Sequence record: NC_031927.1
Length of the DNA stretch: 64,000 bases
Strand: one strand, 5' to 3'
Shown here: positions 1 through 50,423 of the stretch, in pieces
Position numbering within the stretch: the stretch's first letter is position 1
Layout of the letters: the number at the start of each line of letters is the position of its first letter
Notes under the pieces: generated by a model
What the model was told of the DNA's origin: nothing
The model's database searches: none
What the model saw: only the letters and a program-made list of their open reading frames with translations
Position numbers and translations under genes: made by a program

Positions 1-2
1 CT

Positions 3-383
3 AGAGTCAATGCCTTTGGATACGACAATCTTCCCGATGGTTATCACACATACTACCGCCACGGCAAGAAGCTGGCTAAGGCAGCAGCAGCCGCTAAGGT
101 AGCCGAAGCTAAAGCAGCTGCCCGTTCTATTCAGTGGACTGCCGAAGAATATGACGCGGTTGCTCTTGGCTACATCACATACGGCAAGAATGGATATAAG
201 CAAGCAATCAAGGATTTTAGGTTAGTTAGCCAGCGTCACACAGACAACGCCATTAAGCTGGCAACCTACAGCTGTGCTCACCTTGATACCAAGTCAGACG
301 TAGATGGATTAGCCGATTATGCCGAAGGTCTCCTAGACGCACTCAACGCAATTGAGCCTAAGCGATTCAAGGGCACCCGCTGA
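3..383 (+). CDS. Hypothetical early protein, 5'-truncated by the window edge
   Basis: My translation of frame 3 is open from base 3 to TGA 381-383 (RVNAFGYDNLPDG...DALNAIEPKRFKGTR). It is missing from the ORF track because its start lies outside the window. Confidence 0.8.
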   Translation, partial: RVNAFGYDNLPDGYHTYYRHGKKLAKAAAAAKVAEAKAAARSIQWTAEEYDAVALGYITYGKNGYKQAIKDFRLVSQRHTDNAIKLATYSCAHLDTKSDVDGLADYAEGLLDALNAIEPKRFKGTR

Positions 384-392
384 TTTCCCCTA

Positions 393-442
393 GGGGCTAG
401 CCACCTAGCCCCGATCTATGCTACAATTCATTCATACCAAAC
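393..442 (+). promoter_or_regulatory. Early promoter cassette 1: inverted repeat plus TACAAT -10 box
   Basis: GGGGCTAG-CCAC-CTAGCCCC (393-412), TACAAT (422-427). The 22 nt CTACAATTCATTCATACCAAAC are identical to cassettes 2 and 3. Confidence 0.7.
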
Positions 443-454
443 CAGGAACCATCA

Positions 455-673
455 ATGCCTTTCTCACCTGCCTGCCGCCTTTCAGACCAGACCCGCGTAT
501 GGGTTGAGCGCTCAATCTATGAAGGGTGCGATTGGCAAATCGAAAAGCACTTTGGACCAGCACAAGGGCAAGACGCCCAGACCATTGCCGCTCGCTTCGC
601 TGCTACGTATGGGGATGAGGGCAAGACGATGAGCCTAGCTAACCCCTGCAGCGGAATCAGAGCCGAAGATTGA
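455..673 (+). CDS. Hypothetical early protein, 72 aa
   Basis: ORF track. It sits exactly between two promoter cassettes and its stop codon is the first triplet of cassette 2. Confidence 0.7.
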   Translation: MPFSPACRLSDQTRVWVERSIYEGCDWQIEKHFGPAQGQDAQTIAARFAATYGDEGKTMSLANPCSGIRAED

Positions 674-735
674 TCAGCCAAGGGGGTTGACGGATCAGCC
701 CTCTATGGTCTACAATTCATTCATACCAAACAAGG
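671..735 (+). promoter_or_regulatory. Early sigma70-like promoter cassette 2
   Basis: TTGACG (687-692), 18-nt spacer, TACAAT (711-716). 63/65 identical to 946-1010. Confidence 0.85.
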
Positions 736-741
736 GAACCG

Positions 742-948
742 ATGACGACTCTTCACTCTATCGAAAATCTCACAGCCGAGCTCGACCGCCTAGAGGGAAT
801 CAAGAATCGCCTAGCAGGGCTGATCGTAGACCTTAAGCTCACCAACCCAGACTCACTATTCATCGGACTCTATCAGGACCGCCTCAAGTTCAATGTTCTC
901 CCAGCCATCAAGATCACCAAGGGCTACATTCTCAAGACCAGCAACTGA
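742..948 (+). CDS. Hypothetical early protein, 68 aa
   Basis: ORF track. Bounded by cassettes 2 and 3, with AAGGGA just upstream of the ATG. Confidence 0.7.
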   Translation: MTTLHSIENLTAELDRLEGIKNRLAGLIVDLKLTNPDSLFIGLYQDRLKFNVLPAIKITKGYILKTSN

Positions 949-1010
949 CCAGCCAAGGGGGTTGACGGATCAGCCCCCTATGGTCTACAATTCATTCATA
1001 CCAAACAAGG
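946..1010 (+). promoter_or_regulatory. Early sigma70-like promoter cassette 3
   Basis: TTGACG (962-967), 18-nt spacer, TACAAT (986-991). Near-identical to 671-735. Confidence 0.85.
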
Positions 1011-1018
1011 CAACCCAA

Positions 1019-1111
1019 ATGGACCCCATCTCATTCGCAATCGGTATGGTCGGCGCAGCTCTGGTCGGTATCGTCAACGCCGAGCTGATCAAAGCAAACA
1101 ATAAAGATTGA
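1019..1111 (+). CDS. Small hydrophobic protein, 30 aa (MDPISFAIGMVGAALVGIVNAELIKANNKD)
   Basis: Internal ATG of track ORF 893..1111, located just downstream of cassette 3. The longer track start would read through the promoter. One TM-like segment. Confidence 0.6.
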   Translation: MDPISFAIGMVGAALVGIVNAELIKANNKD

Positions 1112-1151
1112 TCAGCCCAGCTCATCCCACTCAATCAAAACTTTTTTTCAA

Positions 1152-1373
1152 ATGACTCCTTCCATCTTTATCGACACTGAGAACAGCTCAACAGCCGTTG
1201 ATGCCATCGTGCTCACCCCCCGTAGAGTTCAGTTCGCTTGGGCATCTGGTTCCGTCTCCGCTCACACCGTCCGCCTCCGCGATCAAGTGAGATTCTACGT
1301 TCGCCACTTGATGATGGATGAGGCTTTGAGCTACGGGCAATGGGCAAACTTCGTTCTAGATGAGCAGCTCTGA
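1152..1373 (+). CDS. Hypothetical early protein, 73 aa
   Basis: ORF track. Fits the tandem + strand arrangement. Confidence 0.7.
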   Translation: MTPSIFIDTENSSTAVDAIVLTPRRVQFAWASGSVSAHTVRLRDQVRFYVRHLMMDEALSYGQWANFVLDEQL

Positions 1374-1429
1374 CCCCTAGGCATCCTGCCCCATCCGTGC
1401 TACAATTCACTCAAGTCAATCAACCGACA

Positions 1430-1618
1430 ATGCTCAACATCACAGCCGACCAGAATGGAACCATCTCTTGGCAAGAGGCTCTCCGCTTCGTGAATGAGGC
1501 AGCAGCTGATCAGCGCAACTTCCTCATCCGTGATTTCTTACAGTCTGCTTACGCTGGATTGAGAGGAGAGAGAATCGACCTAGGTGAGCTCAACGTCTGG
1601 ATCACAGAGAACAGCTGA
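1430..1618 (+). CDS. Hypothetical early protein, 62 aa (MLNITADQNG...)
   Basis: Track ORF 1397..1618 re-started at ATG 1430, because TACAAT at 1401-1406 (followed by TCACTCA, resembling the cassette motif) marks a promoter. Confidence 0.65.
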   Translation: MLNITADQNGTISWQEALRFVNEAAADQRNFLIRDFLQSAYAGLRGERIDLGELNVWITENS

Positions 1619-1626
1619 ATCACACA

Positions 1627-1650
1627 GCCTCCCGCAAGGGGGGCTTTTTT
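1627..1650 (+). terminator. Intrinsic terminator closing the early cluster
   Basis: GCCTCCC-GCAA-GGGGGGC followed by T6. Confidence 0.9.
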
Positions 1651-2055
1651 AATGCGTGCGTGTCAACAGTGATCGTTCGTGATAGGACAGTGCTATCCAT
1701 TCGTGCGTTGAGGACAGTGATATGGCGTTGCGATCCATCGATGGTGGGCGGCGTTACCCCGTATATAAAAAGTACCTTCTATCTAAGCTATAAAAGTAAA
1801 GATCGACCTATACTTATCGCTATTTAAAAAATTCTCCCAGATATTCTATGGACCCCAGAGTTGGCTCAGAGTTGCCTCAGAATACTCAGTGCCCCCCAGA
1901 GTTGTCTCTATATTATACCACACTTCTTAAATATTCCCCCATAAAAAAATCCCCCAGGTATTCAATACCCCTAGGAGATGATTATTATTATCTTGATAAC
2001 ATTCGCTTATCTCTGTGTAATCCCTCTACACAGAAGTATTGCGTATATCTTCAAT

Positions 2056-2120
2056 AAGTACTTAGAGTGTCTTATCAACCTCAACAAGGCTATTCTACAA
2101 GTATCTCCGTGTATTGTCAA
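2056..2120 (-). promoter_or_regulatory. Minus-strand sigma70 promoter plus conserved 36-bp downstream block, copy A
   Basis: Minus strand reads TTGACA (2120-2115), 17 nt, TAGAAT (2097-2092). 2056-2091 matches 49821-49856 at 34/36. Confidence 0.75.
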
Positions 2121-2446
2121 GCCCCCATCAAGAGTATCCCTTTAAGTATCTCAACCATCCCCTGACAAACTGCACAAGGCTATTTAGAGAGTCATAAAAG
2201 AAGTATTTTCATTGAGATGCCGTAGGCACACACCGTAGGTGTGTTAGTAGAGATACTTAAAGAACCATAGAGAATCTTAGAGAAACATAGAGGACCGCAG
2301 AGAGCGCGAAAAATCCCCCTCTCAAGTTATCTCCGAAGAGAGTATTACAGAGAGGGTTATACTATTACTAAGGAATACCCATATACTCTACAACTCACTC
2401 CGAAGGGTATAGAAGAGCTTAGTGGTCAGGGGGGAAATATGCTGTG

Positions 2447-2454
2447 TATAAATA
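2447..2454 (+). promoter_or_regulatory. T4-type late promoter TATAAATA with no ORF downstream
   Basis: Exact gp55 consensus. Confidence 0.7.
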
Positions 2455-2609
2455 GAAGTGGAATACAAGCCTAGGAGCGTCTCTAATAGGCTCTCATCCT
2501 ACGGGGGATAGAGACACTCCGAGTTCCATTGAGGCTCCCCACAAAGGCATTTAGAGTACGTAGAAGAACATATAGTAACGTAGAGGTCCATAGAGGTCCT
2601 CTTTTTTTA
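2455..2609 (+). ncRNA. Candidate structured late ncRNA
   Basis: Lies between a late promoter and a hairpin-T7 terminator. Contains nested stems and a 6-bp pseudoknot (see findings). No ORF with an RBS. Confidence 0.5.
2582..2608 (+). terminator. Probable intrinsic terminator
   Basis: AGAGG-T-CC-ATAGA-GG-T-CCTCT followed by a T tract. Confidence 0.6.
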
Positions 2610-2691
2610 TGGGCGAACCCTTTTTATGACCCTAGGGGGCAAGCCCCCACAATGAGGACCCATAAATACCAATAGAGAATATTAACTTATT

Positions 2692-3405
2692 ATGGCAGTT
2701 AACATAAGCGGTAATGGAGCTATTGAGGGTATTACTTCTTTTAATGGGGAGGATATTGCTTCTTTTAATGAGGGAGGTCCTACTTTCCGCAATATACTCT
2801 TTAATGGTTGGGTGAACACCAGTATTGGAATAAACCAACGTGGCAAAACAATAGCTCAAGTTTCTAATGGGGAATATTGGGCTGATAGGTGGCAACGTGT
2901 TTCATCCACAACTATGACCCAGAAGGTTGAAGGGGGTAACTATATACCAAATAGGACATATACGTTATCTGGTAATAATGTAACAACAACACAAATCACA
3001 TCCCCTGCTAGTGGAACTTGGGATTGGGGTACTGTGCCCTCCAATGCGTCATTGGTTCAGTTGGAGCTAGGTGATACTGCATCTTCTTTTGAATATAGAC
3101 CCTATGGGTTGGAAGTAATTTTGTGTCAGAGGTATTATGAAGTTGTTGATTGTGAATATGGTACAACCGCAGTACTTGATGCGGGGAATTCGAATAAAGC
3201 TATAAAAAAACCTTGGATATATAAAGTTAGTAAAAGAATTATACCAACCGCTATTGTAACTGCTCAAAGTGGTGCTTATTCTACCAATGCTAGTGTGAGT
3301 GGAATACGAAGTTCTTTTTGCAATCTCAATTGGCAATGGCAACAGACATCTGGAAATTTTGATAGGACCAAGGCTGCTGTAGTTAACGTCGATGCCGAAC
3401 TATAA
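2692..3405 (+). CDS. Putative virion/tail-fibre-associated protein, paralogue 1
   Basis: ADRW, VQLELG..ASSFEYRP and LCQRYY motifs, as seen in phage tail-associated proteins. Has its own late promoter CATAAATA at 2661. Confidence 0.8.
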   Translation: MAVNISGNGAIEGITSFNGEDIASFNEGGPTFRNILFNGWVNTSIGINQRGKTIAQVSNGEYWADRWQRVSSTTMTQKVEGGNYIPNRTYTLSGNNVTTTQITSPASGTWDWGTVPSNASLVQLELGDTASSFEYRPYGLEVILCQRYYEVVDCEYGTTAVLDAGNSNKAIKKPWIYKVSKRIIPTAIVTAQSGAYSTNASVSGIRSSFCNLNWQWQQTSGNFDRTKAAVVNVDAEL

Positions 3406-3436
3406 TATAAATACTAATAGAAAATATTAACTTATT

Positions 3437-4159
3437 ATGGCAGTTAACATAAGCGGTAATGGAGCTATTGAGGGTATTACTTCTTTTAATGGGGGCGGAC
3501 TTACCTTTCGTAATATACTCTATAATGGGTGGGTAAACACCAGTAATGAAATAAACCAACGTGGCAAAACAATATCCGAGGTTTCTGATGGAGACTATTG
3601 GGCTGATAGGTGGCAACGTGTTTCCTCTACGACAATGACCCAAAAAGTTGAAGAGGGTAACTATATACCAAATAGGACATATACGTTATCTGGTAATAAT
3701 GTAACAACAGTGCAGGTAACATCACCTGCCAGTGGAACTTGGAATTGGGGAACTGTTCCCTCCAATGCTTCATTGGTTCAGTTAGAGTTGGGTGATACTC
3801 CATCTGCTTTTGAATATAGACCCAAGGGGTTAGAGTTGGGTTTGTGTCAGAGGTACTATCAAAATCTCAATGTTAGAATGTTGTTAGATCAGGTGAATTA
3901 TTTATTTTCTTCTCGCAATTCTTATGTTAATCCAATGCGAACTGCACCATCAGTAGGTTTTACAGGTAAGTTAAAGTGGGATGATTTAATTACCGGGCAG
4001 TTAAGTTCTTCTGGATTTGATTCGGATAATGTTAATGTTTCATCTAAGGTGATTCGGGCAACACAATTTTACGTTTATGTTGCGTTGTCGGGGGTTCAGC
4101 CGAATGTCTTTAAAAGGTATCAATTTGAAGAGGCTATTAGCCTTGATGCCGAACTATAA
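3437..4159 (+). CDS. Putative virion/tail-fibre-associated protein, paralogue 2
   Basis: Same N-terminal domain as paralogue 1, different C-terminus, ends DAEL. TATAAATA at 3406. Confidence 0.8.
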   Translation: MAVNISGNGAIEGITSFNGGGLTFRNILYNGWVNTSNEINQRGKTISEVSDGDYWADRWQRVSSTTMTQKVEEGNYIPNRTYTLSGNNVTTVQVTSPASGTWNWGTVPSNASLVQLELGDTPSAFEYRPKGLELGLCQRYYQNLNVRMLLDQVNYLFSSRNSYVNPMRTAPSVGFTGKLKWDDLITGQLSSSGFDSDNVNVSSKVIRATQFYVYVALSGVQPNVFKRYQFEEAISLDAEL

Positions 4160-4190
4160 TATAAATACCAATAGAGAATACTAACTTATT

Positions 4191-4865
4191 ATGTCAGTTA
4201 ACATAAGCGGTAATGGAGCTATTGAGGGTATTACTTCCTTTAATGGAGGAGGGCTTACTTTCCGCAATATTCTTTATAATGGTTGGGTGAACACCAGTAG
4301 TGAAATCAACCAACGTGGCAAAACAATAGCTCAAGTTTCTAATGGAAACTATTTTGCAGATCGATGGGAAAGAGTTTCATCCACAACTATGACCCAAAAA
4401 GTTGAAGAAAAAAATTATATACCAAATAGGACATATACGATATCGGGTACTAACGTAACAACAGTGCAGGTAACATCACCTGCTAGTGGGACTTGGGATT
4501 GGGGAACTGTGCCGTCTGATGCTTCATTGGTTCAGTTAGAGTTGGGTGATACTGCATCTTCTTTTGAATATAGACCCTATGGATTGGAGTTGAGTTTGTG
4601 TCAGAGGTACTATCAGTTTGCATATGCTAATATTAGAGGTAGGGGTGGGGGTATTTCTGAAAATGCAGTAACCTGGAATACTCAAATGAGAATAGCTCCA
4701 ACAATATTGCGCATTGCGGCAGCTTCAGGTGGAGGTCTCAATAATATAATTCGATATCTTGATATAGCTCCCTATGGGTGTCGTATGGAAGCAACAAACA
4801 CCCAACCTGGCGGTACGGAGAGTTATGCACTTGCGCAAATCTTGGAACTAAATGCTGAACTATGA
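4191..4865 (+). CDS. Putative virion/tail-fibre-associated protein, paralogue 3
   Basis: Same N-terminal domain, different C-terminus, ends NAEL. TATAAATA at 4160. Confidence 0.8.
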   Translation: MSVNISGNGAIEGITSFNGGGLTFRNILYNGWVNTSSEINQRGKTIAQVSNGNYFADRWERVSSTTMTQKVEEKNYIPNRTYTISGTNVTTVQVTSPASGTWDWGTVPSDASLVQLELGDTASSFEYRPYGLELSLCQRYYQFAYANIRGRGGGISENAVTWNTQMRIAPTILRIAAASGGGLNNIIRYLDIAPYGCRMEATNTQPGGTESYALAQILELNAEL

Positions 4866-4951
4866 TTGGATTTATTGTAATACTATTATTCTTTCTTGGG
4901 ATTATGGGTCTTATGACCTTCCTTTCCGTTTTTGGTGATTGGTTTGTATAG
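4862..4951 (+). CDS. Putative 29-aa membrane micropeptide (MIGFIVILLFFLGIMGLMTFLSVFGDWFV)
   Basis: My translation. ATGA overlap with the stop of paralogue 3. Almost entirely hydrophobic. Confidence 0.45.
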   Translation: MIGFIVILLFFLGIMGLMTFLSVFGDWFV

Positions 4952-5030
4952 TACAGTATATGAAGTGGTACATATTAATAGATGCCCCCAGACCCATGGA
5001 GTATAATAACAAGGTATTCAGGAGGTTGAA

Positions 5031-5192
5031 ATGACTCAACTTTATGATATAATCATTGAAGGACAGACAATTCACAAAGGTGTTTCGGAAGAAACCTTCT
5101 TTGATGTTATGTCTGACCTCTCAACAGCATATTATGAGAGGGGCTATCCAGATCCCTCAACAGTTTCCCACACAACTTACATTAAGGAGTAA
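5031..5192 (+). CDS. Hypothetical protein, 53 aa (MTQLYDIIIEGQTIHKGVSEETFFDVM...)
   Basis: My translation. AGGAGG RBS at 5020-5025 and TATAAT at 5002-5007 upstream. Confidence 0.8.
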   Translation: MTQLYDIIIEGQTIHKGVSEETFFDVMSDLSTAYYERGYPDPSTVSHTTYIKE

Positions 5193-5194
5193 CA

Positions 5195-5329
5195 ATGTTC
5201 GGCAAGACACAGGAAAAAATCGAAAAGGCTGGAAAAAAGACCCGTCAGGGTCGTTCCAACCGCACGAAACTCTCTGCAACTTCCGCGAGACCTAGGCAAA
5301 AGCGTTATCGTGGTCAAGGAAGGAGCTGA
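5195..5329 (+). CDS. Small basic protein, 44 aa (MFGKTQEKIEKAGKKTRQGRSNRTKLSATSARPRQKRYRGQGRS)
   Basis: My translation. AAGGAG RBS at 5184-5189. Resembles a small Arg/Lys-rich ORF I recall upstream of g25 in cyanomyoviruses. Confidence 0.8.
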   Translation: MFGKTQEKIEKAGKKTRQGRSNRTKLSATSARPRQKRYRGQGRS

Positions 5330-5394
5330 AATCCCCTTTTTAGTGCTCGAAAAACAAAACTAACCCTTTTTAGGGACCCTACCCCTTCGGGGTA

Positions 5395-5460
5395 TATAAA
5401 TATTTAAAGTTACGATGGGGATAGAACCCCCTTAAAAGTTCTAAAATGTAGTTTTTAGGA
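5395..5460 (+). promoter_or_regulatory. Late promoter followed by a leader with an H-type pseudoknot and an alternative RBS hairpin
   Basis: TATAAATA 5395-5402. S1 is GGGG 5417-20 with CCCC 5428-31. S2 is TAGAAC 5422-27 with GTTCTA 5438-43. Confidence 0.65.
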
Positions 5461-5468
5461 CAAATTTA

Positions 5469-5585
5469 ATGGGAAGACCCGTAGATCGCTCACCTGGCGT
5501 CGTTTTAGTCACCGATTATGGTGCTCTTGACCGCGCTCTCGCTCAAAAAGCTCGCCAAGAAGCCGAAAAAGCCAAGAAAAATTAA
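5469..5585 (+). CDS. Small hypothetical protein, 38 aa (MGRPVDRSPGVVLVTDYGALDRALAQKARQEAEKAKKN)
   Basis: My translation. AGGA at 5457-5460 upstream, and a terminator follows. Confidence 0.7.
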   Translation: MGRPVDRSPGVVLVTDYGALDRALAQKARQEAEKAKKN

Positions 5586-5594
5586 ATAATCTTT

Positions 5595-5621
5595 AAAAAA
5601 GCTCCTTCGGGGGCTTTTTTT
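5595..5621 (+). terminator. Intrinsic terminator, possibly bidirectional
   Basis: A6-GCTCC-TTCG-GGGGC-T7, with a cUUCGg tetraloop. Confidence 0.9.
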
Positions 5622-5626
5622 ATGCC

Positions 5627-5634
5627 TATAAATA
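5627..5634 (+). promoter_or_regulatory. Late promoter for g25
   Basis: TATAAATA. Confidence 0.85.
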
Positions 5635-6060
5635 ATGATAAATGTTGCTTATGCGATGGCTGACGTAAATCGTATCTCTAGATCATTCAAAGACATCAGT
5701 TTATCGTTCCAGCCACATCCTGTAACGAAGGATATTGGTGTTTTGGTCAATGAAAGGGCAATTAATCGGTCAGTTCGCAATATTGTTCAAACAATTCCTG
5801 GCGAAAAGTTTTTCAATCCACTATTTGGGTCCAATGTTAGGTCTCAATTATTTGAAAACGCCAACTATGCCGTTGCTCTTGCGATTGAACAGGAAATTCT
5901 TACATCATTAAGGAATTTTGAGCCTAGAATTGCTAATGTTGGAGTAACAGCTAATTTATTCCCAGACAGGAATGAGTTTGACGTTACAGTTACATATGAA
6001 ATTGTAGGACAAGCGTTTCCACCCCAAACTTATAACTTTATTTTAACGAGTACTAGGTAA
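5635..6060 (+). CDS. g25: Baseplate wedge subunit gp25
   Basis: FKDISLSF...ERAINRSVRNIVQT..GEKFFNPLFGS...FEPRI pattern, directly upstream of g6. The true start is probably ATG 5656, since 5635 abuts the promoter. Confidence 0.92.
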   Translation: MINVAYAMADVNRISRSFKDISLSFQPHPVTKDIGVLVNERAINRSVRNIVQTIPGEKFFNPLFGSNVRSQLFENANYAVALAIEQEILTSLRNFEPRIANVGVTANLFPDRNEFDVTVTYEIVGQAFPPQTYNFILTSTR

Positions 6061-7985
6061 TGGCTTTCACTAAGTTTACAAATTTAGACTACGATCAAAT
6101 TAGAGAGTCTATTAAAGATTATTTGCGAGCCAACTCAAACTTTAGTGGGTTTGATTTTGATGGTTCTAATTTTAGTATCCTTATTGATACATTAGCCTAT
6201 AATGCATATATCAACTCGGTAAATGCAAATATGATCGTCAATGAATCCTTTTTGGATTCTGCGACACTACGTAGAAACGTTGTTTCATTGGCTGGTAACA
6301 TTGGTTATCTCCCAAGATCACGCAAAGCTGCTAGAGCTAGAGTCAAGTTCACCGTACAGACCTCTTCTACGACCCCTACGTTGACCTTGAAGGCAGGTCT
6401 AGTTGCTGTTGGGTCAGAAGCTAACAGTAGTTACGTATTTTCCATTCCAGAGGATATTACGACCACTGTGGTGAATGGTGTTGCTCAGTTTGGAACTGAT
6501 GATGAGCCTATTGAGATCTACCAGGGAACATTTGCTAAGACATCATTTAATGTAGATACATCATTAGACCAGAGATTCATTATTGCTAACCCAGATCTAG
6601 ACTATAGTACTCTAGTTGTTAGGATCAAGGATCCTAATGAAGTTGGGTTGGGTAAAGTATGGGAGCGTGTAGAGAATATTATTAAAATTGATAGTAATAG
6701 TGAAATTTATTTCTTAGCTGAAGTAAACCAAGAGAACTATGAACTTCTATTCGGTGATGATATCTTCGGCAAAGCTTTACAGAATGGTCAAGTAATTGAT
6801 TCAACATATATTGTAACAAAAGGTAAAGAAGGTGATGGTCCAGCTAACTTTACATTCTCTGGTTCTCTAGTTAATGATAATGGAGCAATTACTGCACCTT
6901 CTAACGTCATCACTGTAGATACTCTAGAATCGGCTAGAAACGGTGCAGACATAGAGACGGTAGATTCTATCAAGTACTATGCTCCCCGCGTGTATGGAGC
7001 CCAATACAGGGCTGTGACGGGGCGTGACTACGAAGGCATCATTAAGAGCATCTATCCAAACACAGAATCCGTTTCTGTCGTTGGTGGTGAAGAACTTGTA
7101 CCCCCACAATTTGGTAATGTATTAATTAGTATTAAGCCAGTAAATGGTCTTGATGTTAGTGACTTTGATAAGAAGCAAATCTTAGATGGATTAAAGCAAT
7201 ATACTATTGCGGGTATTAATCAAAAAATTGTAGACCTTAAAATTCTATTTGTTGAGCTTGATGCTTCTGTATACTATGATGTTACTAAAGTTGGTAACTC
7301 AAATACACTGAAGACTGATATTATGCGGTCACTAAACTCATATTCAACTTCTATTGATATTAATAAGTTTGGTGGTAGATTTAAGTACTCTAAAGTGCAA
7401 AAAGTTATTGACGATACTGATATTGCTGTAACTTCCAACATCACTAAAGTTATTGTTAGAAGAAACCTAAATGCTGTTCTAAATCAGTTTGCTCAATATG
7501 AGCTTTGCTATGGAAATGCGTTCCATCCGATTGCATCTGGTGGTTCTATTAAGAGTAGTGGATTTACTATTGCTGGTTCACCATCCACTCTATACATAAC
7601 AGATGCTCCAAACAAGGATAATAATGGAAACTTGGATGGGTCTGGTATGGGTACCATATCATTCATCAGTGAAAATATTAATTCTACAGGTTCCTCCAAT
7701 TACATAACTGTTGTTGAAGATGCTGGCTTTGTTGACTATGCAAAAGGTGAGATTCAGTTATTTACTACAAATATAACCGGCACATCATTACCTAATGAGA
7801 TTATTGAAATACAAGCATATCCAAATTCAAATGACGTTATTGGATTGAAGGATTTATATGTCGTATTTGATGTTTCTACTAGTAGGATAAATATGGTTAA
7901 GGATACAATTTCTAGTGGTGAACAGATCTCTGGTGTTGGATTCCCAGTAACATCAAGTTACGGAAACGGCAAACTAACAAGGTAA
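6060..7985 (+). CDS. g6: Baseplate wedge subunit gp6
   Basis: LDYDQIRESIKDYL...FDFDGSNFSILIDTLAYN...ESFLDSATLRRNVVSLA and QYRAVTGRDY motifs. Confidence 0.95.
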   Translation: MAFTKFTNLDYDQIRESIKDYLRANSNFSGFDFDGSNFSILIDTLAYNAYINSVNANMIVNESFLDSATLRRNVVSLAGNIGYLPRSRKAARARVKFTVQTSSTTPTLTLKAGLVAVGSEANSSYVFSIPEDITTTVVNGVAQFGTDDEPIEIYQGTFAKTSFNVDTSLDQRFIIANPDLDYSTLVVRIKDPNEVGLGKVWERVENIIKIDSNSEIYFLAEVNQENYELLFGDDIFGKALQNGQVIDSTYIVTKGKEGDGPANFTFSGSLVNDNGAITAPSNVITVDTLESARNGADIETVDSIKYYAPRVYGAQYRAVTGRDYEGIIKSIYPNTESVSVVGGEELVPPQFGNVLISIKPVNGLDVSDFDKKQILDGLKQYTIAGINQKIVDLKILFVELDASVYYDVTKVGNSNTLKTDIMRSLNSYSTSIDINKFGGRFKYSKVQKVIDDTDIAVTSNITKVIVRRNLNAVLNQFAQYELCYGNAFHPIASGGSIKSSGFTIAGSPSTLYITDAPNKDNNGNLDGSGMGTISFISENINSTGSSNYITVVEDAGFVDYAKGEIQLFTTNITGTSLPNEIIEIQAYPNSNDVIGLKDLYVVFDVSTSRINMVKDTISSGEQISGVGFPVTSSYGNGKLTR

Positions 7986-8001: not shown

Positions 8002-11000
8002 ATGATTGGTACTGGTATTGATGTGAGAGTGAAGATTCAAGATATTGTTTCTTCACAACTTCCCGAATTTATTTTAAGTGAAGCGCCATTAACTGATGAC
8101 TTCTTAAAACAGTTTTATGTCTCCCAGGAATTTCAGGGAGGGGCAATTGATTTTGCTACAAATTTAGACCAGTACCTAGACCTAAACAACCTAAGTTCAG
8201 ATTCTCTCTACGGCACATTTGAACTAACCCAAGATATATCATCCACAGATACAGAAGTATTTGTAAATACAACAAAAAGTTTCCCTGGCGAGTGGGGGCT
8301 CTTAAAGGTCAATGATGAAATCATGACCTATACTGGTATTACAACCAATTCTTTCACTGGCGTTGTAAGGGGCTTCAGTGGAGTAACTTCACTTCATGCT
8401 GAAGGTGCTCCCGAAGAGATTGTATTTAATGCCACAGAGGCTTCTAGCCACCTCTCAGGTGCTTCTGTAACAAACCTAAGCACATTATTCCTAAAAGAAT
8501 TTTATAAAAAGCTCTCATACACATTTGCTCCTGGTTTTGAGGACCTAGATGTTGATTCTGAACTTGATGTAGGCAACTGGATTCGACAGGTTCGTTCATT
8601 CTTCCAAACAAAGGGAAGTGAGGAGTCAATCATTATTCTCTTCAAAGTTTTATATGGGGAGAAGCCAACTGTTATTGACTTGGAAGATTTCCTAATCAAG
8701 CCATCAACAGCAGAGTACTCTAGGAGAGATTATGCGGTAGCTATTCCCGTTGAAGGAAATCCAATTGACCTCAAAGGTAAAACTATCTTTCAAGTAGGCA
8801 GCCCCAATGTATTTGGTGCTGTTTCTGAGATTGAAGCATTTACTCGTGATGGGAGATTGTATTATAGGATTTATTTCTTCGTATCTAATGAAGAGGTATT
8901 GAATGAAAGAAAGCTATTCACAATTCCTGGAAGAACTCAATGCCAGAGGGAATGGAATCCTGGTGATACAACGCTCACCGTAGATACTACTATTGGCTTC
9001 CGCGATAATGGTGAGTTCATAACAGCGGACGGCATTGTATTCAATTACGAACAGAGGAGTGTTAATCAATTCCTAGGTGTTACTTGTTCTGTTCCAACAA
9101 AGAAAGTTCTAATTACTGATGAGATCATTGACAATATAATTGTCTCTGGTATGAATGATCTTGGGGAAGAAGTTACTTTGCGCCTAACTGGAGTTATTTC
9201 TGATATTAATTTTGGTGATGATATTCCATTTAATTTCCAAGGTGAGAAAATTCGTGTAGATACTCTAGGTGAAAGTATTTTAAGTAATATTGCTACTAGA
9301 GACGAATCAACCGTACCAGAAATTATTGCTAATAGCTTTGTATATAATACAAGTGTTAGATTTGAAGTGGAAAGTGTTAATGGTACTTCATTCATTTTAT
9401 CAGCACCTTACTTAGACAAATCATCTATTGATGTTGGAGATACTGTTGATATCCTTCCACGTGGTGGTCAGAATGCTTATATCATAGGTGCTCTAGTTAC
9501 CGAAGTTGATTTTGTTAACTCTACCGTTACAATTAATAACTCATTCGGTATTCCAGTTAACCAGTCACTGGATATTAGGAGAAATCAAAAATATGCTAAT
9601 AGTAGTGGAGCTAGAATTGACTATGGTAACAATGCCGTACTATCAAATGTTTTGAACTTATATGATGGTAGAGAGTACGATTCAAATTACTACGTAGCAA
9701 CTAATTCACTACCATCCTATGAAATCTCTGCCAATATTGTAGAGAGTTCATTAGTTAGTCCAACACAACAGAGCTTTGATGATTTTAATAGTTTCACTGG
9801 TGAGTATTCAACTATTATCTTTGCGGGTGATGTTAATTTTTATACCGGGGATTTAGTTACTTATTCCGTAAGTGAAGGAGCAACTTCATTAACTGAAACT
9901 GGGGAATATTATGTTCAAGTTCTATCTGATAGAAGAAAGGTTAAGCTTTTTGTTTCTCCATCATTTATTGGAAGTGAGAATTCAGTTGGACTTGTATATA
10001 CTCCAGACTCAGGCTCACATTTCTTTACTCTAGAAAGTCAGAAGACACGTGAAATTTCAACTAAGCGTATTTTTAGAAAAATTCCTGTATCTGATAGTTT
10101 AGTTGCTATTGATAGAACTCCTGAAGAAACTACTCCTGGTTCTATCGCAGTATTGACTAATGGTGTGGAGATTGTTTCATATAAGTCTCCAAATAAAGTA
10201 TACCTGGGTCCACTTGAGAGATTAGATGTTGGATCACGTGGTGAAGGATATAGTGTAATATCTCCACCCAAAATCTACATTGCCGAACCTGATGTTCAGC
10301 TATATGAAGGTGGTACTGGTAGTGTAGTTCCTACTAAAGCTACAAGTACTCCAGTAATTAAAGGTAAGTTAGAGGAAATTCTAATTGACCCACAGGACTT
10401 TGATATTAAAGAAGTATTCAGTATCACTGTCAGGGGTGGTAATAGTCGTGGTGCATCAGCTGTTCCTATTATTGATAAAAAGAATAGGGAACTACCTTTT
10501 GATAGTAGAGTTACTACATTGGGTGGCGGTGTTAATCCTGATGATAACAGCATCCTTTTTCAGAGCAATCATAATTTAACAGAAGGAACTGCATTAGTTT
10601 ATAATAACAAGGGTGCTGATAGTATTGGTATTACCCTTTCAGATAATACTGATTTTAGTACAGGTGCAACTCTTTCTAATGGTGGAGTTTATTATGCTAA
10701 AATATTAAACAATAGAACTATTCAATTATTCGAGACTTTAGAGTCTTTGAATAATGGTGGAGATCCAGTATTTCTATCATCAAATCTAACTGGGTATGGT
10801 TTTCAGTCATTTGATACATTAAGGGCTGATAGATTGATTGGAGCAACAATCACTGATGATGGTGGAGACTTTTTCTATAGAAATATGTCCTTCAATCCAT
10901 CAAATGTATTTGATGAGTATGATGAAATCAGATACGTATCCCACGGATTTAATAGTGGGGATATTGTAGAGTATGGGACTACTGGAACTGTTATTAGTGG

Positions 11001-14000
11001 AATGTCCACACAGAATCAGTACTATGTCTACAAAGTAAATGATAATGTACTAAAACTATCTGATGCCGGTATTGGAGCAACTATATCCAGCAACTATGAT
11101 AGGTTGGAATTTGTTGACTTTAATAGTTCTGGTACAGGCACTCATAATATCAAATATCCAGACATCACAGCCGATGTTGTAGTTTCTTTTGCTAGTAGTG
11201 CAACTGGAACAATTGTAGCTAGTCCTATTATCCGTGGATCAATTGAACAAGTCTATACAGATGATGGTGGATATTATGGTAGTGATATTATTAATTTTGA
11301 AAAAAATCCAGAAGTATATCCAATTGGTGGGTCACTGGCTAAATTATCACCATCAATTGTTAATGGGATTGTTAATTTTGTTCAAATTATCAATACTGGA
11401 AAAAACTACTCTGATTGTCCTGAATTAGTTGTTAGTGATTCTAGCGGCGCTGGAACTGGTGCTAAATTAAGGGCAGTTGTTGTAGACGGCGAAATAATAG
11501 ATGTTATCATAATTAGTGGTGGTATTGGTTATAATTCGGCATCTACAACTATTGAAGTCCTTGAGACTGGTAGAGATGCGCTAATTATTCCTAGAATTAG
11601 AGACCTAACAATCAATCTAAATTCTAGATTTGGATTTGAGGTTCTTAGTCAAAATAACTATAGGATCGTATCATATAATAGAGTCCTTAGAGAAGGCGTT
11701 TATAGTGATGTTGGTAACTTCCACTCACCTATTATTGGTTGGGCTAATGATGGTAATCCAATTTATGGTGGTTTTGGTTTCTCCGACCCCCAGGATACTA
11801 ACTCAGAAATCCGTGCTATGGAGACCGCATATGAATTGGCTCCCAATGATGTATATGGTAGACCTTCACAGACAGCATATCCAGCTGGTTTCTTCATTGA
11901 GGATTACAAGTATGTTGATGGTGGTGACCTAGATGAATACAATGGTCGTTACTGCCGCACACCAGACTTCCCCAATGGTGTATATGCATACTTTGCTGGA
12001 ATTTCACCAGACCCACAGTCAAGTGCTAGAGAGCCACAGTTCCCATACTTCATTGGACCTAAGTTTAGGGATTCTGCAATTGATTCAAATAGTACTAATG
12101 TTGATCAGAGCTTTGATCTTAATGATAAGCCAATCTTTAGAAATACATTCCCATACTATGTTGGGAGTCCAGTAGCTGGTAGTGAGTTCATCGATCAATC
12201 CTATCTATTTGATATTCAGGATAGTATTGTACAATCAACTTCTCCAGGAACTATTGATTCCATTTCAATTGTTGGTGACGGAAAAGATTACTCCGTTGGT
12301 GATGTACCTTTATTTAATTCTGATGAAGATTTTATCAGTGCTACTATATCTCAGGTAACTGGTATTGGTGTATCAGAAGTTAGAGAAAATACCCTATCTT
12401 ACAGTAAGTTAGATACAGCAGTAATTAGATTAGATCAGAAAACTATTCGCATATATGTTTCCCCCAATCACCAATACAATGATAACGACTCTGTTATTAT
12501 TAGTGGATTAAGTACGATTACATCCACTATTAGTGGATCAAGAATTGTAAATATAGATAACTCAGCAATGACTCTATATTCACCAGTTCAGCCTATCGTA
12601 AATGATGGTGTTACTGATATATTTGTAAATTCAATATCTCAAAATGTGAGTGTTGGATCTTCAATTGAAATTGGTAATCCCGGCGAAACTGAATTGGTAA
12701 GTGTATTAAATATCTTCCCAATCAATAAGGCACTTCGTGTATATCGCCCTGTTGGGTTTAATACTGTCGCAAACATTGGTGATCTCGTATCACCATTACC
12801 AAACTTCTTTGATGTTAATGTTAGAACTCCCGAGTTTGAGTCCGAGCTTGACTATGCGTATAACTTCAATCCAAAACAATCTTTAAGTATTGCTCCATCT
12901 CTTGGAGAATCTACTAGTAGAGTTTATAGTATTGGTAGTATTGATTACCCAATATCAGTACCTGCTGCGTCAATTTATGCACCAAACCATCAATTTAAAA
13001 ACTTAGAGGAAGTTGTATTTACTAAGCCAGCTAATGGTATTAGCCTTGATGGATTGGATTCAAATAATAATCCAGTTGTTGTTCCTATCATTGGCGATAG
13101 CCAAGTGCTGTATGTTCATAACATTTCCAAAGACTACATTGGGTTGAGATTTACTCCTAGTGACGAAGACATCATCTTCCTCACGGATGCTTCCGATCTA
13201 TTCACATATTCTATAAAAACAAATAGGTTTGTTGAAACTGCAAACTTGGATAGAATTCGTGCCGAAGTCACTACTATTAAACCTCATCAACTAAAGAATA
13301 ATGATACTGTTACTATTAGTGTATCTGCGTTGAATTCTTCCGGCATTGGAACTGCTTCCGATGTTTATATTCAGTTTGATGAAATTTCGCAGTCATTGAT
13401 CGTTGATCCAAAATTTGCTACATCAGCAGATATCTCAACTGAATTGAATCTCGTCTTCATTGAAGATCACGGATATATTTTGGGAGACTATGTTTTATAT
13501 GAGTGTGATGGAACTTCTATTTCTGGATTAACAACTCATTCCAAATATTTTATCATTCCATTTGATACCGATAGATTCTATCTAGCGGAAACTGCTATTG
13601 ATGTTAAGATTGGATCTGAGCTTCCTATCATATTGGGTTCTACTGGTTCTGGTGAGCATAAGTTCTCCAAAGTTAATCCAGAACTCAATATTACCGGCAA
13701 TCACGATATATTGTTCGATGTATCTGATCCATCACTTTTAAATAGAGAGCTAAAGTTCTTCTACGATCAGAATCTAACAGAAGTATTTGAGAATAATGGT
13801 ATTGATCCCGTATTTGTTGTTAGTGGAGTTTCTAGTGAAGGAACTATTGGAGCAACTAAAGAGATTAGATTCTCTGAAAACAATCCTGGAGTAATTTATT
13901 ACGGTATTGAGTCTGGTGGATACATCTCCACATCAGATACTAATGCAATCGCATATAACTCAATTAAGTATGTTAATAGTGTATATTCTACTAAAGGAAC

Positions 14001-47239: not shown

Positions 47240-47674
47240 ATGAATTTAGAAAAAATCCAGGAAATGTGGGAAGCTGATTCCAAGATTGATATGGATAATC
47301 TCCACGATGAATCAATCAAAATCCCACAGCTACATCAAAAGTATTACACACTGTATACCACAATTAAACTTCTACGGACAAAATGTAATGATACTCTAGC
47401 TAAAACTAGGTTAGAGAGATACAACTACTACAGTGGTAAGGCACCAGCAGAAGCATATGTCGAAGAGCCATTCCCATATAAGGTAAGGGATAAGGAGTCA
47501 ATGTCTATGCATTTGAATGCCGATGATAAGCTAGCAAAAATCAAGCTTAAAATGGATTACTATGATGTGATGATTTCTTTCTTGGAAGATATTCTAAAAA
47601 TGGTTCACAATAGAGGCTATCAAGTAAAAAATAGTATTGACTTTCTCAAATTTCAATCTGGTATGGGGTTCTAA
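47240..47674 (+). CDS. uvsY: Recombination mediator UvsY
   Basis: W..DS.ID..NL..ES..IP.LH.KY and I.NR.YQ.KN.I.F..F..G motifs. Confidence 0.92.
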   Translation: MNLEKIQEMWEADSKIDMDNLHDESIKIPQLHQKYYTLYTTIKLLRTKCNDTLAKTRLERYNYYSGKAPAEAYVEEPFPYKVRDKESMSMHLNADDKLAKIKLKMDYYDVMISFLEDILKMVHNRGYQVKNSIDFLKFQSGMGF

Positions 47675-49946: not shown

Positions 49947-50423
49947 ATGGCTAAAGCTAAAACTGAACATTACGTTAACAATAGAGATTTTCTTGATGCT
50001 CTTATCGAGTACCGAGAGAAGGTAGCTGAAGCTGCTGCTAATGATCGCCCTAAGCCTAGGATTACTAACTATATTGGGTCTTGCTTCCTTAAGATTGCTA
50101 CCCACCTTAGCTATAAGTCTAACTTCGTAAACTATATGTACCGTGAGGATATGATCTCCGATGGTATTGAGAACTGCGTACAATACATCCATAACTTTGA
50201 CCCAGCTAAGTCAAAGAACCCATTCGCATACTTCACCCAGATTAGCTACTTCGCATTCCTACGCCGTATTCAGCGAGAGAAGAGACAGCTTGATATTAAA
50301 ACTAAGATTGTAGAGAAGAGTGGATTTGAAGCACTAATGACTTCTGATGCTAATCTAACCAACGAATACCGTAACGATTACAACGCAATCAAAGAAAACA
50401 TCATTACCAAGCTTAACTCATGA
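49947..50423 (+). CDS. g55: Late-transcription sigma factor gp55
   Basis: HYVNN..F, F..Y.YREDMISDG.ENC.QY..NFDP.KS.NPFAYFTQI...AFLRRI..EK.Q motifs. Confidence 0.97.
   Translation: MAKAKTEHYVNNRDFLDALIEYREKVAEAAANDRPKPRITNYIGSCFLKIATHLSYKSNFVNYMYREDMISDGIENCVQYIHNFDPAKSKNPFAYFTQISYFAFLRRIQREKRQLDIKTKIVEKSGFEALMTSDANLTNEYRNDYNAIKENIITKLNS

What the first reader, a model, noticed from the sequence alone, without database searches (positions are those of the whole stretch)
2661..4865. Triplicated self-contained cassettes with a constant N-terminal domain and a swapped C-terminal domain
Seen: three ~750-bp units, each with its own late promoter and leader. They share about 150 aa of near-identical N-terminus up to LCQRYY, then have 75-95 aa with no evident DNA similarity (only a faint MR..PT/KR..PT motif), and reconverge on (D/N)AEL-stop (GATGCCGAACTATAA identical in copies 1 and 2). 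Each variable segment is therefore bracketed by homology on both sides. Inference: an array of alternative receptor-binding or adhesin tips that can be exchanged, expanded or contracted by UvsX/UvsY recombination. This would diversify host range without a reverse transcriptase or invertase.
Basis: partly seen in the sequence, partly recalled or inferred. Interest (0 to 1): 0.75.

Follow-up and report, generated by a model that had tools for sequence, protein, structure and literature searches.

The report
Stacked spike-tip genes in a cyanophage
A marine cyanophage carries three back-to-back copies of a small tail-spike or fibre-tip gene whose front half is kept alike and whose back half is a swappable cassette. 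This is a clean new example of the well-known way phages shuffle their host-recognition parts.

Summary
Window 2661-4865 (Synechococcus phage S-CAM7) carries three tandem same-strand genes (237, 240, 224 aa), each 23 nt downstream of a T4-type late-promoter motif.

- **Sequence pattern:** the first 141-149 aa are 88% identical and the last 83-99 aa only 23-27%. All three tails still belong to one domain family and end in AEL, as do 175 of 235 relatives.
- **Family:** a family profile matches the solved trimeric vertex spike GP13 of vibriophage NO16. That spike has a short N-terminal anchor, a CBM-like sandwich, a linker helix (here LCQRYY) and a second sandwich. The predicted fold also matches the C-terminal tips of long phage tail fibres.
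- **Recombination:** synonymous divergence is 0.42-0.47 in the front halves and saturated in the tails. Front-half site patterns are patchy, which indicates gene conversion.
- **Relatives:** two isolates with identical flanking genes differ almost only in the tails of copies 2 and 3. Related metagenomic phages carry one copy, each with another tail, between the same flanks. In another cyanophage lineage the tail alone differs between near-identical genomes.

The array is therefore a stack of alleles of a receptor-binding-type gene, built and edited by homologous recombination. Virion location and host-range effect are untested. The principle is known and the family is new, so interest is moderate.

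The parts
2661..2668 (+). Late-promoter-like motif CATAAATA of copy 1, 23 nt before the ATG
   Evidence: Sequence. The same motif and leader precede the single-copy genes of relatives.
2692..3405 (+). Copy 1 (c1, 237 aa; RefSeq gp121 'tail fiber protein')
   Evidence: PHROG 4492 E=5.9e-47 over residues 1-237.
2692..3138 (+). c1 conserved front part (aa 1-149): about 19-aa N-terminal anchor peptide, CBM-like sandwich and linker helix ending in LCQRYY
2725..2777 (+). 24-nt tandem duplication (2.2 copies) giving the 8-aa insertion between anchor and sandwich in c1 only
3139..3402 (+). c1 variable tail cassette (88 aa, ends DAEL)
   Evidence: Related tails occur in P0011 (40% aa) and P0015 (33% aa).
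3406..3413 (+). TATAAATA late-promoter-like motif of copy 2, directly after the c1 stop codon
3437..4159 (+). Copy 2 (c2, 240 aa; gp122)
   Evidence: PHROG 4492 E=1.1e-52. AF2 model mean pLDDT 79.
3437..3859 (+). c2 conserved front part (aa 1-141)
   Evidence: Model residues 21-140 have pLDDT above 95 and residues 130-138 form a helix.
3860..4156 (+). c2 variable tail cassette (99 aa, ends DAEL)
   Evidence: The same tail type occurs as a single-copy allele in L088/P0002 (86% aa) and on diverged front parts in P0010 and P0012.
4160..4167 (+). TATAAATA late-promoter-like motif of copy 3, directly after the c2 stop codon
4191..4865 (+). Copy 3 (c3, 224 aa; gp123)
   Evidence: PHROG 4492 E=7.5e-47.
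4191..4613 (+). c3 conserved front part (aa 1-141)
4614..4862 (+). c3 variable tail cassette (83 aa, ends NAEL). This is the most variable spot between S-CAM7 isolates.
   Evidence: 45 of the differences in window 2600-6200 fall here, including a 12-nt indel.
4862..4951 (+). Unannotated 29-aa hydrophobic ORF whose ATG overlaps the c3 stop (ATGA). It follows the last or only copy in every relative.
   Evidence: same length and conserved ends in 8 related loci.

Best explanation
The three genes are paralogous alleles of one small receptor-binding spike or fibre-tip protein of the T4-like cyanophage S-CAM7.

Each protein has four parts:
- a roughly 19-residue N-terminal anchor peptide;
- a conserved CBM-like beta-sandwich;
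- a short linker helix (..GLEL.LCQRYY);
- a second, hypervariable beta-rich domain that ends in the family-wide AEL terminus.

By homology with the solved NO16 GP13 spike, each is inferred to form a homotrimer that plugs into a virion socket through the shared anchor. The three kinds would then sit on equivalent baseplate or fibre sites and give one particle several binding specificities.

Each gene has its own gp55-type late-promoter-like motif, so all three are probably made late, together with the baseplate genes just downstream.

The array arose by stacking, in tandem, alleles that exist as single-copy alternatives at the same locus in related phages. It is edited by homologous recombination in three ways: patchy gene conversion keeps the front parts alike, crossovers in the front part and in the next unit or downstream flank replace tails, and unequal crossovers in the 43-70-nt identity tracts at the promoter, leader and 5' end add or remove units.

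Shown here: the anatomy, the family membership, the recombination footprints, and the variation in copy number and alleles among relatives. Inferred: trimer formation, virion location, late co-expression and a role in host recognition.
For: Identity and context:
- The window is S-CAM7. The array sits 0.8 kb upstream of gp25, gp6 and a 4314-aa baseplate-associated protein.

Family:
- PHROG 4492 'tail fiber' matches the whole length.
- There are 1878 cluster representatives at E<=1e-3. The module is always C-terminal, with 80-120 aa after the C.RY motif in 210 of 235 relatives. 48 of 235 are stand-alone like these.
- It forms the C-terminal end of the 771-aa ACG-2014f tail fibre. In other phages it lies next to a tailspike or tail-tip genes.

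Solved relative:
- Profiles hit PDB 9t9r 'Spike (GP13)', 235 aa, three chains, at E=6.7e-8 and 5.6e-6, with both conserved blocks aligned.
- The NO16 preprint (10.1101/2025.11.28.690173) describes it as a virion protein by mass spectrometry and cryo-EM. It is a trimer whose residues 3-20 form an anchoring stalk, with two beta-sandwiches joined by a small helix; the N-terminal sandwich is CBM-like.
- The AF2 model of c2 has residues 21-140 above pLDDT 95 and a helix at 130-138.
- 8 of 48 relatives hit Pfam CBM_4_9.

Recombination:
- Front parts have dS 0.42-0.47 and omega 0.15. Tails are saturated.
- 'Odd-one-out' site patterns form 35 runs against 59.6+-4.2 expected; 0 of 10,000 permutations reached that.
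- Perfect identity tracts of 43-70 nt lie at the 5' ends.
- Isolate 0809CC03 has identical c1, gp25 and gp6. It has 12 differences in the c2 tail and 45 in the c3 tail, where dS is 0.088 and dN 0.175.

Allele stacking:
- L005-L008, L045, L087, L088 and L089 each carry one copy between the same upstream and downstream flanks. Their tails differ, and one is the c2 type at 88% nt identity over the whole gene.

Cassette mobility:
- L013 and L046 are 95-100% identical in the flanks and 92% in the front part, but 41-62% in the tail.
- P0011 against P0015 is 62% nt in the front part and 78% in the tail.

Machinery:
- UvsY, UvsW, gp46, gp47 and a gp55-like factor are encoded in the window.
Against: - There is no direct evidence that any of the three proteins is in the S-CAM7 virion or is transcribed late.
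- The PDB link is by profile only, at E about 1e-6 to 1e-8. Single sequences find nothing.
- Foldseek against the PDB library (entries to April 2026) found nothing significant.
- The tail is modelled at pLDDT 50-60, and a second model could not be run.
- In NO16 the putative sugar cleft is in the N-terminal sandwich, which is the conserved half here. The variable half may therefore not be the only binding surface, or not the main one.
- All cultured isolates keep the same three copies in the same order.
- The only candidate contraction (L009) comes from a short-read assembly and could be an assembly path.
- For the last copy and for single-copy loci, the 3' homology is only a few codons.
Confidence: 0.7

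Rival explanations
1. Plain old triplication. The gene was copied twice long ago, and the tails simply diverged faster under diversifying selection, with no exchange between copies or genomes.
For: - All tails are homologous.
- omega exceeds 1 in the tails between isolates: 1.6 and 2.0, on small counts.
- Other tandem pairs in environmental phages show a milder front-to-tail gradient.
Against: - Selection cannot saturate synonymous sites in the tails while front-part dS stays at 0.45.
- Front-part site patterns are clustered in blocks.
- The c3 tail has dS 0.088 between isolates whose flanking 2.3 kb has dS 0.
- The c2-type and c1-like tails occur on much more diverged front parts, and at another locus in another lineage.
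Confidence: 0.05
2. The proteins are not virion parts. They are late-made soluble or cell-bound lectin-like proteins, for example decoys, superinfection-exclusion factors or assembly helpers, that merely share a fold with fibre tips.
For: - There are no proteomic data for S-CAM7.
- The proteins are very small, with only about 19 residues ahead of the first sandwich.
- A conserved 29-aa membrane-type peptide gene is translationally coupled to the last copy.
Against: - In longer relatives the same module is the C-terminal end of annotated tail fibres.
- The only solved relative, of the same size and layout, is a virion spike held by just such a short N-terminal stalk.
- The genes sit next to the baseplate genes and behind late-promoter motifs.
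Confidence: 0.12
3. One working gene plus reserve cassettes. Only one copy is used in the virion, and the others are a store of alternative tails that recombine into the used copy, as in antigenic-variation systems.
For: - There are long identity tracts at the 5' ends.
- There are gene-conversion patches.
- Most relatives manage with a single copy.
Against: - Every copy is a complete ORF with its own start codon, leader and promoter-like motif.
- The front parts are all under purifying selection, with omega 0.15.
- No copy is truncated or promoterless.
Confidence: 0.08
4. Programmed switching. The array is a site-specific invertible or reverse-transcriptase-driven variation system, like the Mu G segment, the P1 C segment, a shufflon or a DGR.
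For: Only the superficial layout of a constant N-terminal part with alternative C-terminal parts.
Against: - All copies are on one strand and complete.
- Only short, imperfect, chance-level inverted repeats are present.
- There is no ORF of 100 aa or more within 2.6 kb upstream or 0.8 kb downstream that could encode a recombinase.
- No second copy of any tail exists that could serve as a template repeat.
Confidence: 0.02

Closest known systems
Spike protein GP13 of the non-tailed vibriophage NO16 (PDB 9t9r; preprint 10.1101/2025.11.28.690173)
   Same: - Similar size: 235 aa against 224-240 aa.
- Stand-alone, with a short N-terminal anchor followed by two beta-rich halves joined by a small helix.
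- Both conserved sequence blocks align: the NiLiNG..iNQ..Y..D.W block and the EL..C.R block plus M..P.
- The N-terminal sandwich is CBM-like.
   Different: - The host virus belongs to another realm: a tailless, membrane-containing, double-jelly-roll capsid virus.
- It docks on a capsid penton, not a tail.
- It is a single gene, not an array.
- Similarity is remote and detectable by profile only.
- Trimer state and virion location are shown for GP13 only.
C-terminal tip module of long phage tail fibres (PHROG 4492; for example the 771-aa tail fibre of Synechococcus phage ACG-2014f and the 361-aa protein of Vibrio phage phi 1)
   Same: The same module, with the same C.RY boundary and AEL end. 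Foldseek probability is 1.0 against many of these.
   Different: In those proteins the module is fused to a shaft of up to about 900 residues. In S-CAM7 it is free-standing and present three times in tandem.
T2/S16-type gp38 tail-fibre adhesins and the mosaic tail-fibre genes of T-even and lambdoid phages (own knowledge: Tetart et al. 1996-98; Haggard-Ljungquist et al. 1992; Dunne et al. 2018)
   Same: - A small separate protein with a conserved attachment part and hypervariable receptor-binding segments.
- The variable segments are bracketed by conserved motifs that serve as recombination points.
- Host range evolves by homologous exchange without dedicated enzymes.
   Different: - No sequence relation: there was no Pfam hit of any kind at E<=1.
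- gp38 is a single gene, and its variable segments are loops within one domain.
Multi-RBP phages with a shared N-terminal anchor and exchangeable distal domains, such as Klebsiella and other phages with several depolymerase spikes and lactococcal RBP head-domain swaps (own knowledge: Latka et al. 2019; Duplessis and Moineau 2001)
   Same: Several receptor-binding genes side by side, with a conserved N-terminal docking part, variable distal parts and a domain-boundary recombination point.
   Different: - The folds differ: beta-helix depolymerases or lactococcal head domains.
- In S-CAM7 the conserved part covers 60% of the protein and includes a CBM-like domain.
- In S-CAM7 the copies are stacked alleles of a single locus.
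Invertible tail-fibre segments (Mu G, P1 C) and DGR-diversified Mtd of Bordetella phage BPP-1 (own knowledge)
   Same: They give the same outcome: alternative or variable C-terminal receptor-binding ends on a constant N-terminal part.
   Different: Those systems need an invertase with inverted repeats, or a reverse transcriptase with a template repeat. None of these features is present here.

Membership tests
NO16 GP13-like spike (PDB 9t9r) | Detectable sequence homology to the solved chain | tested here: met
   Profile A4 gives E=6.7e-8 and the broader profile A5 gives E=5.6e-6, with two collinear aligned blocks. Single sequences give no hit.
NO16 GP13-like spike (PDB 9t9r) | Stand-alone protein of about 235 aa with a roughly 20-residue N-terminal anchoring stalk | tested here: met
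   The proteins are 224-240 aa. The conserved first 19 residues precede the sandwich, and the alignment to the chain starts at its residues 10-14.
NO16 GP13-like spike (PDB 9t9r) | Two beta-sandwiches joined by a small helix | tested here: inconclusive
   The AF2 model has a confident N-terminal half, a helix at 130-138 and strands beyond it, but the C-terminal half has pLDDT 50-60. Foldseek against the PDB library found no match. I could not establish whether 9t9r is in that library.
NO16 GP13-like spike (PDB 9t9r) | Homotrimer | not testable with these tools
   Only monomer prediction is offered.
NO16 GP13-like spike (PDB 9t9r) | Component of the virion | not tested
   No S-CAM7 proteome was found in the paper library.
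PHROG 4492 / tail-fibre C-terminal tip module | Significant full-length match to the family profile | tested here: met
   E=5.9e-47, 1.1e-52 and 7.5e-47, covering residues 1-237, 9-240 and 9-224 and ending at the last profile position.
PHROG 4492 / tail-fibre C-terminal tip module | Module at the extreme C-terminus, with about 80-120 aa after the C.RY motif and an AEL-type end | tested here: met
   The tails are 88, 99 and 83 aa and end DAEL, DAEL and NAEL. In the family, 210 of 235 relatives have that tail length and 175 of 235 the AEL end.
CBM_4_9 carbohydrate-binding module (Pfam PF02018) | Match above the Pfam threshold | tested here: not met
   None of the three proteins has a Pfam hit at E<=1. 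8 of 48 diverse relatives match, best E=6.4e-7. CBM4 modules in the PDB match at E 0.02-0.1 only. The proteins are therefore CBM-like by relation, not filed as members.
Invertible tail-fibre switch (Mu G / P1 C segment type) | Alternative C-terminal segments in opposite orientation, flanked by inverted repeats, with an adjacent invertase gene | tested here: not met
   All copies are on the same strand and complete. Only 15-17-nt imperfect inverted repeats are present. No ORF of 100 aa or more lies in the flanks.
Diversity-generating retroelement (Mtd type) | Template repeat matching the variable region, plus a reverse transcriptase | tested here: not met
   No second copy of any tail exists in the window. 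The reverse transcriptase was not searched for genome-wide.
T2/S16-type gp38 adhesin | Sequence membership in the gp38 family | tested here: not met
   No Pfam, NCBIfam or PDB hit of that kind came back. The likeness is functional only.

The most novel reading that the evidence does not exclude
The three proteins share one anchor peptide and compete for the same sockets, possibly even mixing within trimers because their front halves are 88% identical. Each S-CAM7 particle would then be a mosaic of specificities.

Tandem 'allele stacking' at a locus that is single-copy and polymorphic in the wild would be the way a specialist lineage turns into the generalist that S-CAM7 is reported to be.

The same free-standing module serves as the vertex spike of a tailless virus of another realm. 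That would make it a host-recognition part traded between virus realms.
Probability: 0.25. Interest if true: 0.65.

Novelty: new member of a known kind. Interest (0 to 1): 0.45.

Why it matters
- **Candidate receptor-binding proteins.** These proteins are almost unknown for marine T4-like cyanophages. S-CAM7 is used in coevolution and pilus-binding studies and is reported to interact with many hosts. This locus gives three concrete candidates.
- **An unnamed family with fixed cassette boundaries.** The family has about 1,900 clusters at 50% identity and no Pfam or NCBIfam model. Its cassette boundaries are the LCQRYY helix and the AEL end, so tail types can be catalogued in metagenomes as markers of host-recognition diversity.
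- **A clean natural example of array formation.** It shows a multi-specificity array being built by stacking alleles of a single polymorphic locus.
- **A link between virus groups.** It ties tail-fibre tips of tailed phages to the newly solved spike of a tailless vibriophage.

The underlying principle, modular exchange in phage fibre genes by homologous recombination, is textbook.

Tried and rejected
- **Foldseek of the c2 model against the PDB library.** No significant match; the top hits were discoidin and SiiE at E above 0.1.
- **Single-sequence PDB searches** with c3 and with the Vibrio phage phi 1 homologue found nothing relevant.
- **Pfam and NCBIfam** gave no hit for the three proteins.
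- **The search for related loci in IMG/VR.** The close-relative alignment returned nothing. With c2 it returned only distant relatives.
- **Two DNA pattern scans of metagenome contigs.** One pattern targeted the copy-to-copy junction and the other the promoter and leader. The first gave no match. The second gave 38 loci, none of which holds the module, so they are chance matches.
- **Rfam on window 1-6000.** Only a sub-threshold chance hit.
- **RNA fold of the G+C-rich stretch upstream of copy 1.** Not better than shuffles, z = -1.07, so no claim is made.
- **Composition profile.** No foreign-looking G+C in the tails.
- **Supplementary tables of the S-CAM7 coevolution preprint,** which would say which tail-fibre genes mutated, are not held.
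- **Rejected readings:** assembly artefact, since three independent isolate genomes carry the array; invertible switch or DGR; unrelated swapped domains.

Transparency note: the script skipped copy 1's extra 24 nt so that the three front parts stayed in register. This is equivalent to dropping gap columns. The joined string existed only in memory for counting site patterns and was neither printed nor saved.
Full report
**What the window is.** The region is 100% identical to Synechococcus phage S-CAM7 (Kyanoviridae, Mazuvirus; NC_031927/KU686212 and KU686213). It is 97.4% identical to a third isolate, MT586120 (0809CC03). RefSeq names the three ORFs gp121-123 'tail fiber protein'; the GenBank records call them hypothetical. 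Downstream lie gp25 (5635-6060), gp6 (6060-7985), a 4314-aa baseplate-associated protein (8002-20946) and a gp8-like protein. Further on, the window encodes the major capsid protein, UvsY (47240-47674), UvsW (47911-49371), a gp55-like late sigma factor (49947-50423), gp47 (50420-51475) and gp46 (51764-53488).

**Checking the observation.** The three ORFs are 2692-3405, 3437-4159 and 4191-4865. Each ATG lies 23 nt after an ATAAATA-type motif: CATAAATA at 2661-2668, and TATAAATA at 3406-3413 and 4160-4167. TATAAATA occurs 12 times in the window, 11 of them on the coding strand and several just upstream of structural genes. Shuffles gave a mean of 6.2 and a maximum of 11. That TATAAATA is the gp55-dependent T4 late promoter, and NATAAATA its cyanophage form, is established knowledge and was not tested here.

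- The front parts (149, 141 and 141 aa, ending in LCQRYY) are 88% identical. Copy 1 has an extra 8 residues from a 24-nt tandem duplication.
- The tails (88, 99 and 83 aa) are 23-27% identical.
- The last 15 nt of copies 1 and 2, the stop codon and the following promoter motif are identical. Copy 3 ends NAEL-TGA.

The description is correct, with 'near-identical' softened to 88%.

**The tails are one domain, not three.** Each tail alone scores 20.6, 28.7 and 28.4 bits against a profile built only from the tails of 90 distant relatives. Shuffled tails reach at most 7.5 bits. Across 235 relatives the module is always C-terminal. In 210 of them 80-120 residues follow the C.RY motif, and 175 end in exactly AEL. 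The AEL 'reconvergence' is therefore a family-wide structural feature.

**What the protein is.** Pfam and NCBIfam give nothing. PHROG 4492 'tail fiber protein' matches the whole length of each copy, against the last third of that profile. An exhaustive search finds 1878 cluster representatives at E<=1e-3, with N-terminal extensions from 0 to about 900 residues; 48 of 235 are stand-alone like these. The module ends the 771-aa tail fibre of cyanophage ACG-2014f and a 361-aa protein next to the tail protein of an N4-like vibriophage. In metagenomic phages it lies beside a tailspike with a pectate-lyase fold, beside siphovirus tail-tip genes, or between the neck and sheath genes and the terminase gene of other T4-like cyanophages.

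A family profile hits one solved structure, 9t9r 'Spike (GP13)', at E=6.7e-8, and a broader profile hits it at 5.6e-6, with both conserved blocks aligned. The paper behind it (10.1101/2025.11.28.690173) describes a 235-aa virion protein of the tailless vibriophage NO16. It is a trimer anchored by residues 3-20. Its body is two beta-sandwiches joined by a small helix, and the N-terminal sandwich resembles carbohydrate-binding modules.

The AF2 model of copy 2 agrees in outline. Residues 21-140 are above pLDDT 95, residues 130-138 form a helix (the ..LCQRYY stretch), and strands follow at lower confidence. The CBM link is echoed by Pfam CBM_4_9 hits in 8 of 48 diverse relatives and by weak PDB hits to CBM4 modules. 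Foldseek against predicted viral structures returns tail-fibre C-termini of many phages. Foldseek against the PDB library returns nothing.

**Recombination footprints inside the array.**
- Nei-Gojobori estimates give dS 0.42-0.47, dN 0.06-0.07 and omega 0.15 for the front parts. The tails are saturated. Selection alone cannot produce that contrast at synonymous sites.
- Among 86 variable sites in the front parts, the three 'odd-one-out' patterns are equally common (30, 28 and 26) but strongly clustered. There are 35 runs against 59.6+-4.2 in permutations, and none of 10,000 permutations was as low. This is the signature of patchy gene conversion. Some blocks could instead be single multi-nucleotide events.
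- Perfect identity tracts of 43-70 nt span the promoter, the leader and the first codons.

**Comparison of isolates.** Against isolate 0809CC03, copy 1, gp25 and gp6 are identical. The differences within 2600-6200 fall almost entirely in the tails:
- 12 are in the tail of copy 2.
- 45 are in the tail of copy 3, including a 12-nt indel, with dS 0.088 and dN 0.175.
- 4 are in the front parts.
- 2 are in the 1.3 kb downstream.

Synonymous differences confined to a 250-nt patch in otherwise identical DNA point to import by recombination.

**Relatives: one copy, many tails, same flanks.** S-CAM7-like metagenomic contigs L005-L008 (gp6 dS 0.76 to the window) carry one 247-aa gene with another tail at this locus. 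Four further contigs each carry a single gene between sequences homologous to the c1-upstream and c3-downstream flanks:
- L088 has the c2-type tail, at 88% nt identity over the whole gene.
- L087 and L089 have the L005 type.
- L045 has a c1-like tail.

The front parts of the S-CAM7 paralogues are about as diverged from one another (12-13%) as c2 is from its single-copy counterpart in L088 (12%). This fits a stack of alleles from different lineages better than an in-place duplication. The identical junction string after copies 1 and 2 suggests that the junction was made once and then propagated by unequal crossing-over (inference).

**A possible contraction.** Contig L009 (Logan assembly of run SRR12470689) is 99.95% identical to isolate 0809CC03 downstream of the array. 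It joins the c1-upstream flank directly to the c3-type gene. The switch from c1-like to c3-like sequence lies inside the 43-nt identity tract. This could be a real two-unit deletion or an assembly path; I lean towards a real deletion but cannot decide. The coevolution preprint on S-CAM7 reports that over half of the changes in evolved S-CAM7 isolates were deletions. Its BioProject number is of the same period as that run. That link is only a guess.

**Cassette exchange is a family habit.** L013 and L046 are two T4-like cyanophage contigs from one metagenome, and there the gene lies just before the terminase gene. Their flanks are 95-100% identical and the front part is 92% identical. Identity falls to 41-62% exactly between LCQRY(Y/F) and ADAEL, then returns. 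P0011 (S-CAM7-like locus) and P0015 (that other lineage and locus) are 62% identical in DNA in the front part but 78% in the tail. The c2-type tail also occurs on front parts only 56-61% identical. Five of about 20 distinct IMG/VR loci hold two genes with this module, and in L024, L028/L029 and L036 the two are adjacent. Four of these pairs were compared and show a milder front-to-tail gradient.

**How it most likely works.** This section is inference, except where marked as shown above. Three late genes would give three homotrimeric spikes with the same anchor peptide and the same CBM-like domain but different distal domains. They would dock on equivalent sites of the baseplate or fibres and broaden or hedge host recognition. 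Recombination with co-infecting relatives and between units renews the tails and changes unit number. In NO16 the proposed sugar cleft is in the conserved N-terminal sandwich. The conserved half may therefore bind a common glycan while the variable half adds strain specificity. Host galE (LPS) mutations give resistance to S-CAM7, which is compatible with a glycan receptor but does not implicate these genes.

**Compared with what is known.** This is another case of modular receptor-binding proteins with a constant docking part and exchangeable distal part, evolving by homologous recombination, as in T-even gp37/gp38, lambdoid side fibres, lactococcal RBPs and multi-spike Klebsiella phages (own knowledge). 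It is not an invertible switch or a DGR.

Three things are new:
- The family has no curated model, and its only structure comes from a 2025 preprint on a tailless phage.
- The cassette boundaries are sharp.
- The three-unit array is a stack of alleles of a locus that is single-copy and polymorphic in relatives.

**Limits.**
- There are no expression or virion data for S-CAM7.
- The relatives are mostly short-read contigs.
- The dN/dS values between isolates rest on small counts.
- In one search the extra 24 nt of copy 1 were skipped in memory to keep the copies in register; nothing was printed or saved.

Noticed in passing
window 4862-4951 (+): There is an unannotated 29-aa strongly hydrophobic ORF whose ATG overlaps the stop codon of copy 3 (ATGA). 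The same 29-codon ORF, with conserved ends (MIGFI...GDWFV), follows the last or only copy in 8 related loci. The internal copies of the array lack it, because the unit junction replaces it. It may be a translationally coupled membrane peptide; its function is unknown.
   Followed up: partly
window 382-451, 671-740, 946-1015, 1388-1423 (+): A roughly 70-nt element is repeated before successive small ORFs of 68-73 aa. Two copies carry a sigma-70-like TTGAC-17-TACAAT pair after a G+C-rich stretch. It resembles the early-promoter cassettes that flank small genes in plastic regions of T4-type genomes (own knowledge). The copies vary between S-CAM7 isolates.
   Followed up: partly
window 2058-2660: This roughly 600-nt stretch upstream of copy 1 has no annotated gene. 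It is rich in TAGAG-type short repeats and holds one more TATAAATA, at 2447-2454. Parts of it are conserved in relatives. No Rfam family matched, and its folding is not better than that of shuffles.
   Followed up: partly
window 2725-2777 (+): A 24-nt tandem duplication (2.2 copies) in copy 1 lengthens the linker between the N-terminal anchor peptide and the first sandwich by 8 residues. It is absent from copies 2 and 3 and from all relatives aligned.
   Followed up: yes
L013:5001-5675 and L046:2393-3052: In another T4-like cyanophage lineage the same module gene sits just before the terminase gene. Two near-identical genomes from one metagenome differ only in its tail cassette.
   Followed up: yes
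PDB 9t9r versus tailed-phage fibre tips: The vertex spike of a tailless, membrane-containing vibriophage (NO16) and the C-terminal tips of tail fibres of many tailed phages appear to share one module. Those tailed phages include three Vibrio phages, one of them on Vibrio anguillarum. The passages of the NO16 preprint that I read report only CBM-type structural matches.
   Followed up: partly
window 60888-61919 (+): A 343-aa protein with a C-terminal Peptidase_S74 intramolecular-chaperone domain (E=4.5e-15) is another fibre- or spike-type gene, far from the baseplate cluster.
   Followed up: no
L024, L028/L029, L036, L018 (IMG/VR contigs): In distant environmental phages, genes with this module carry a larger N-terminal domain and often come in adjacent pairs. 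Duplication at such loci is therefore recurrent.
   Followed up: partly
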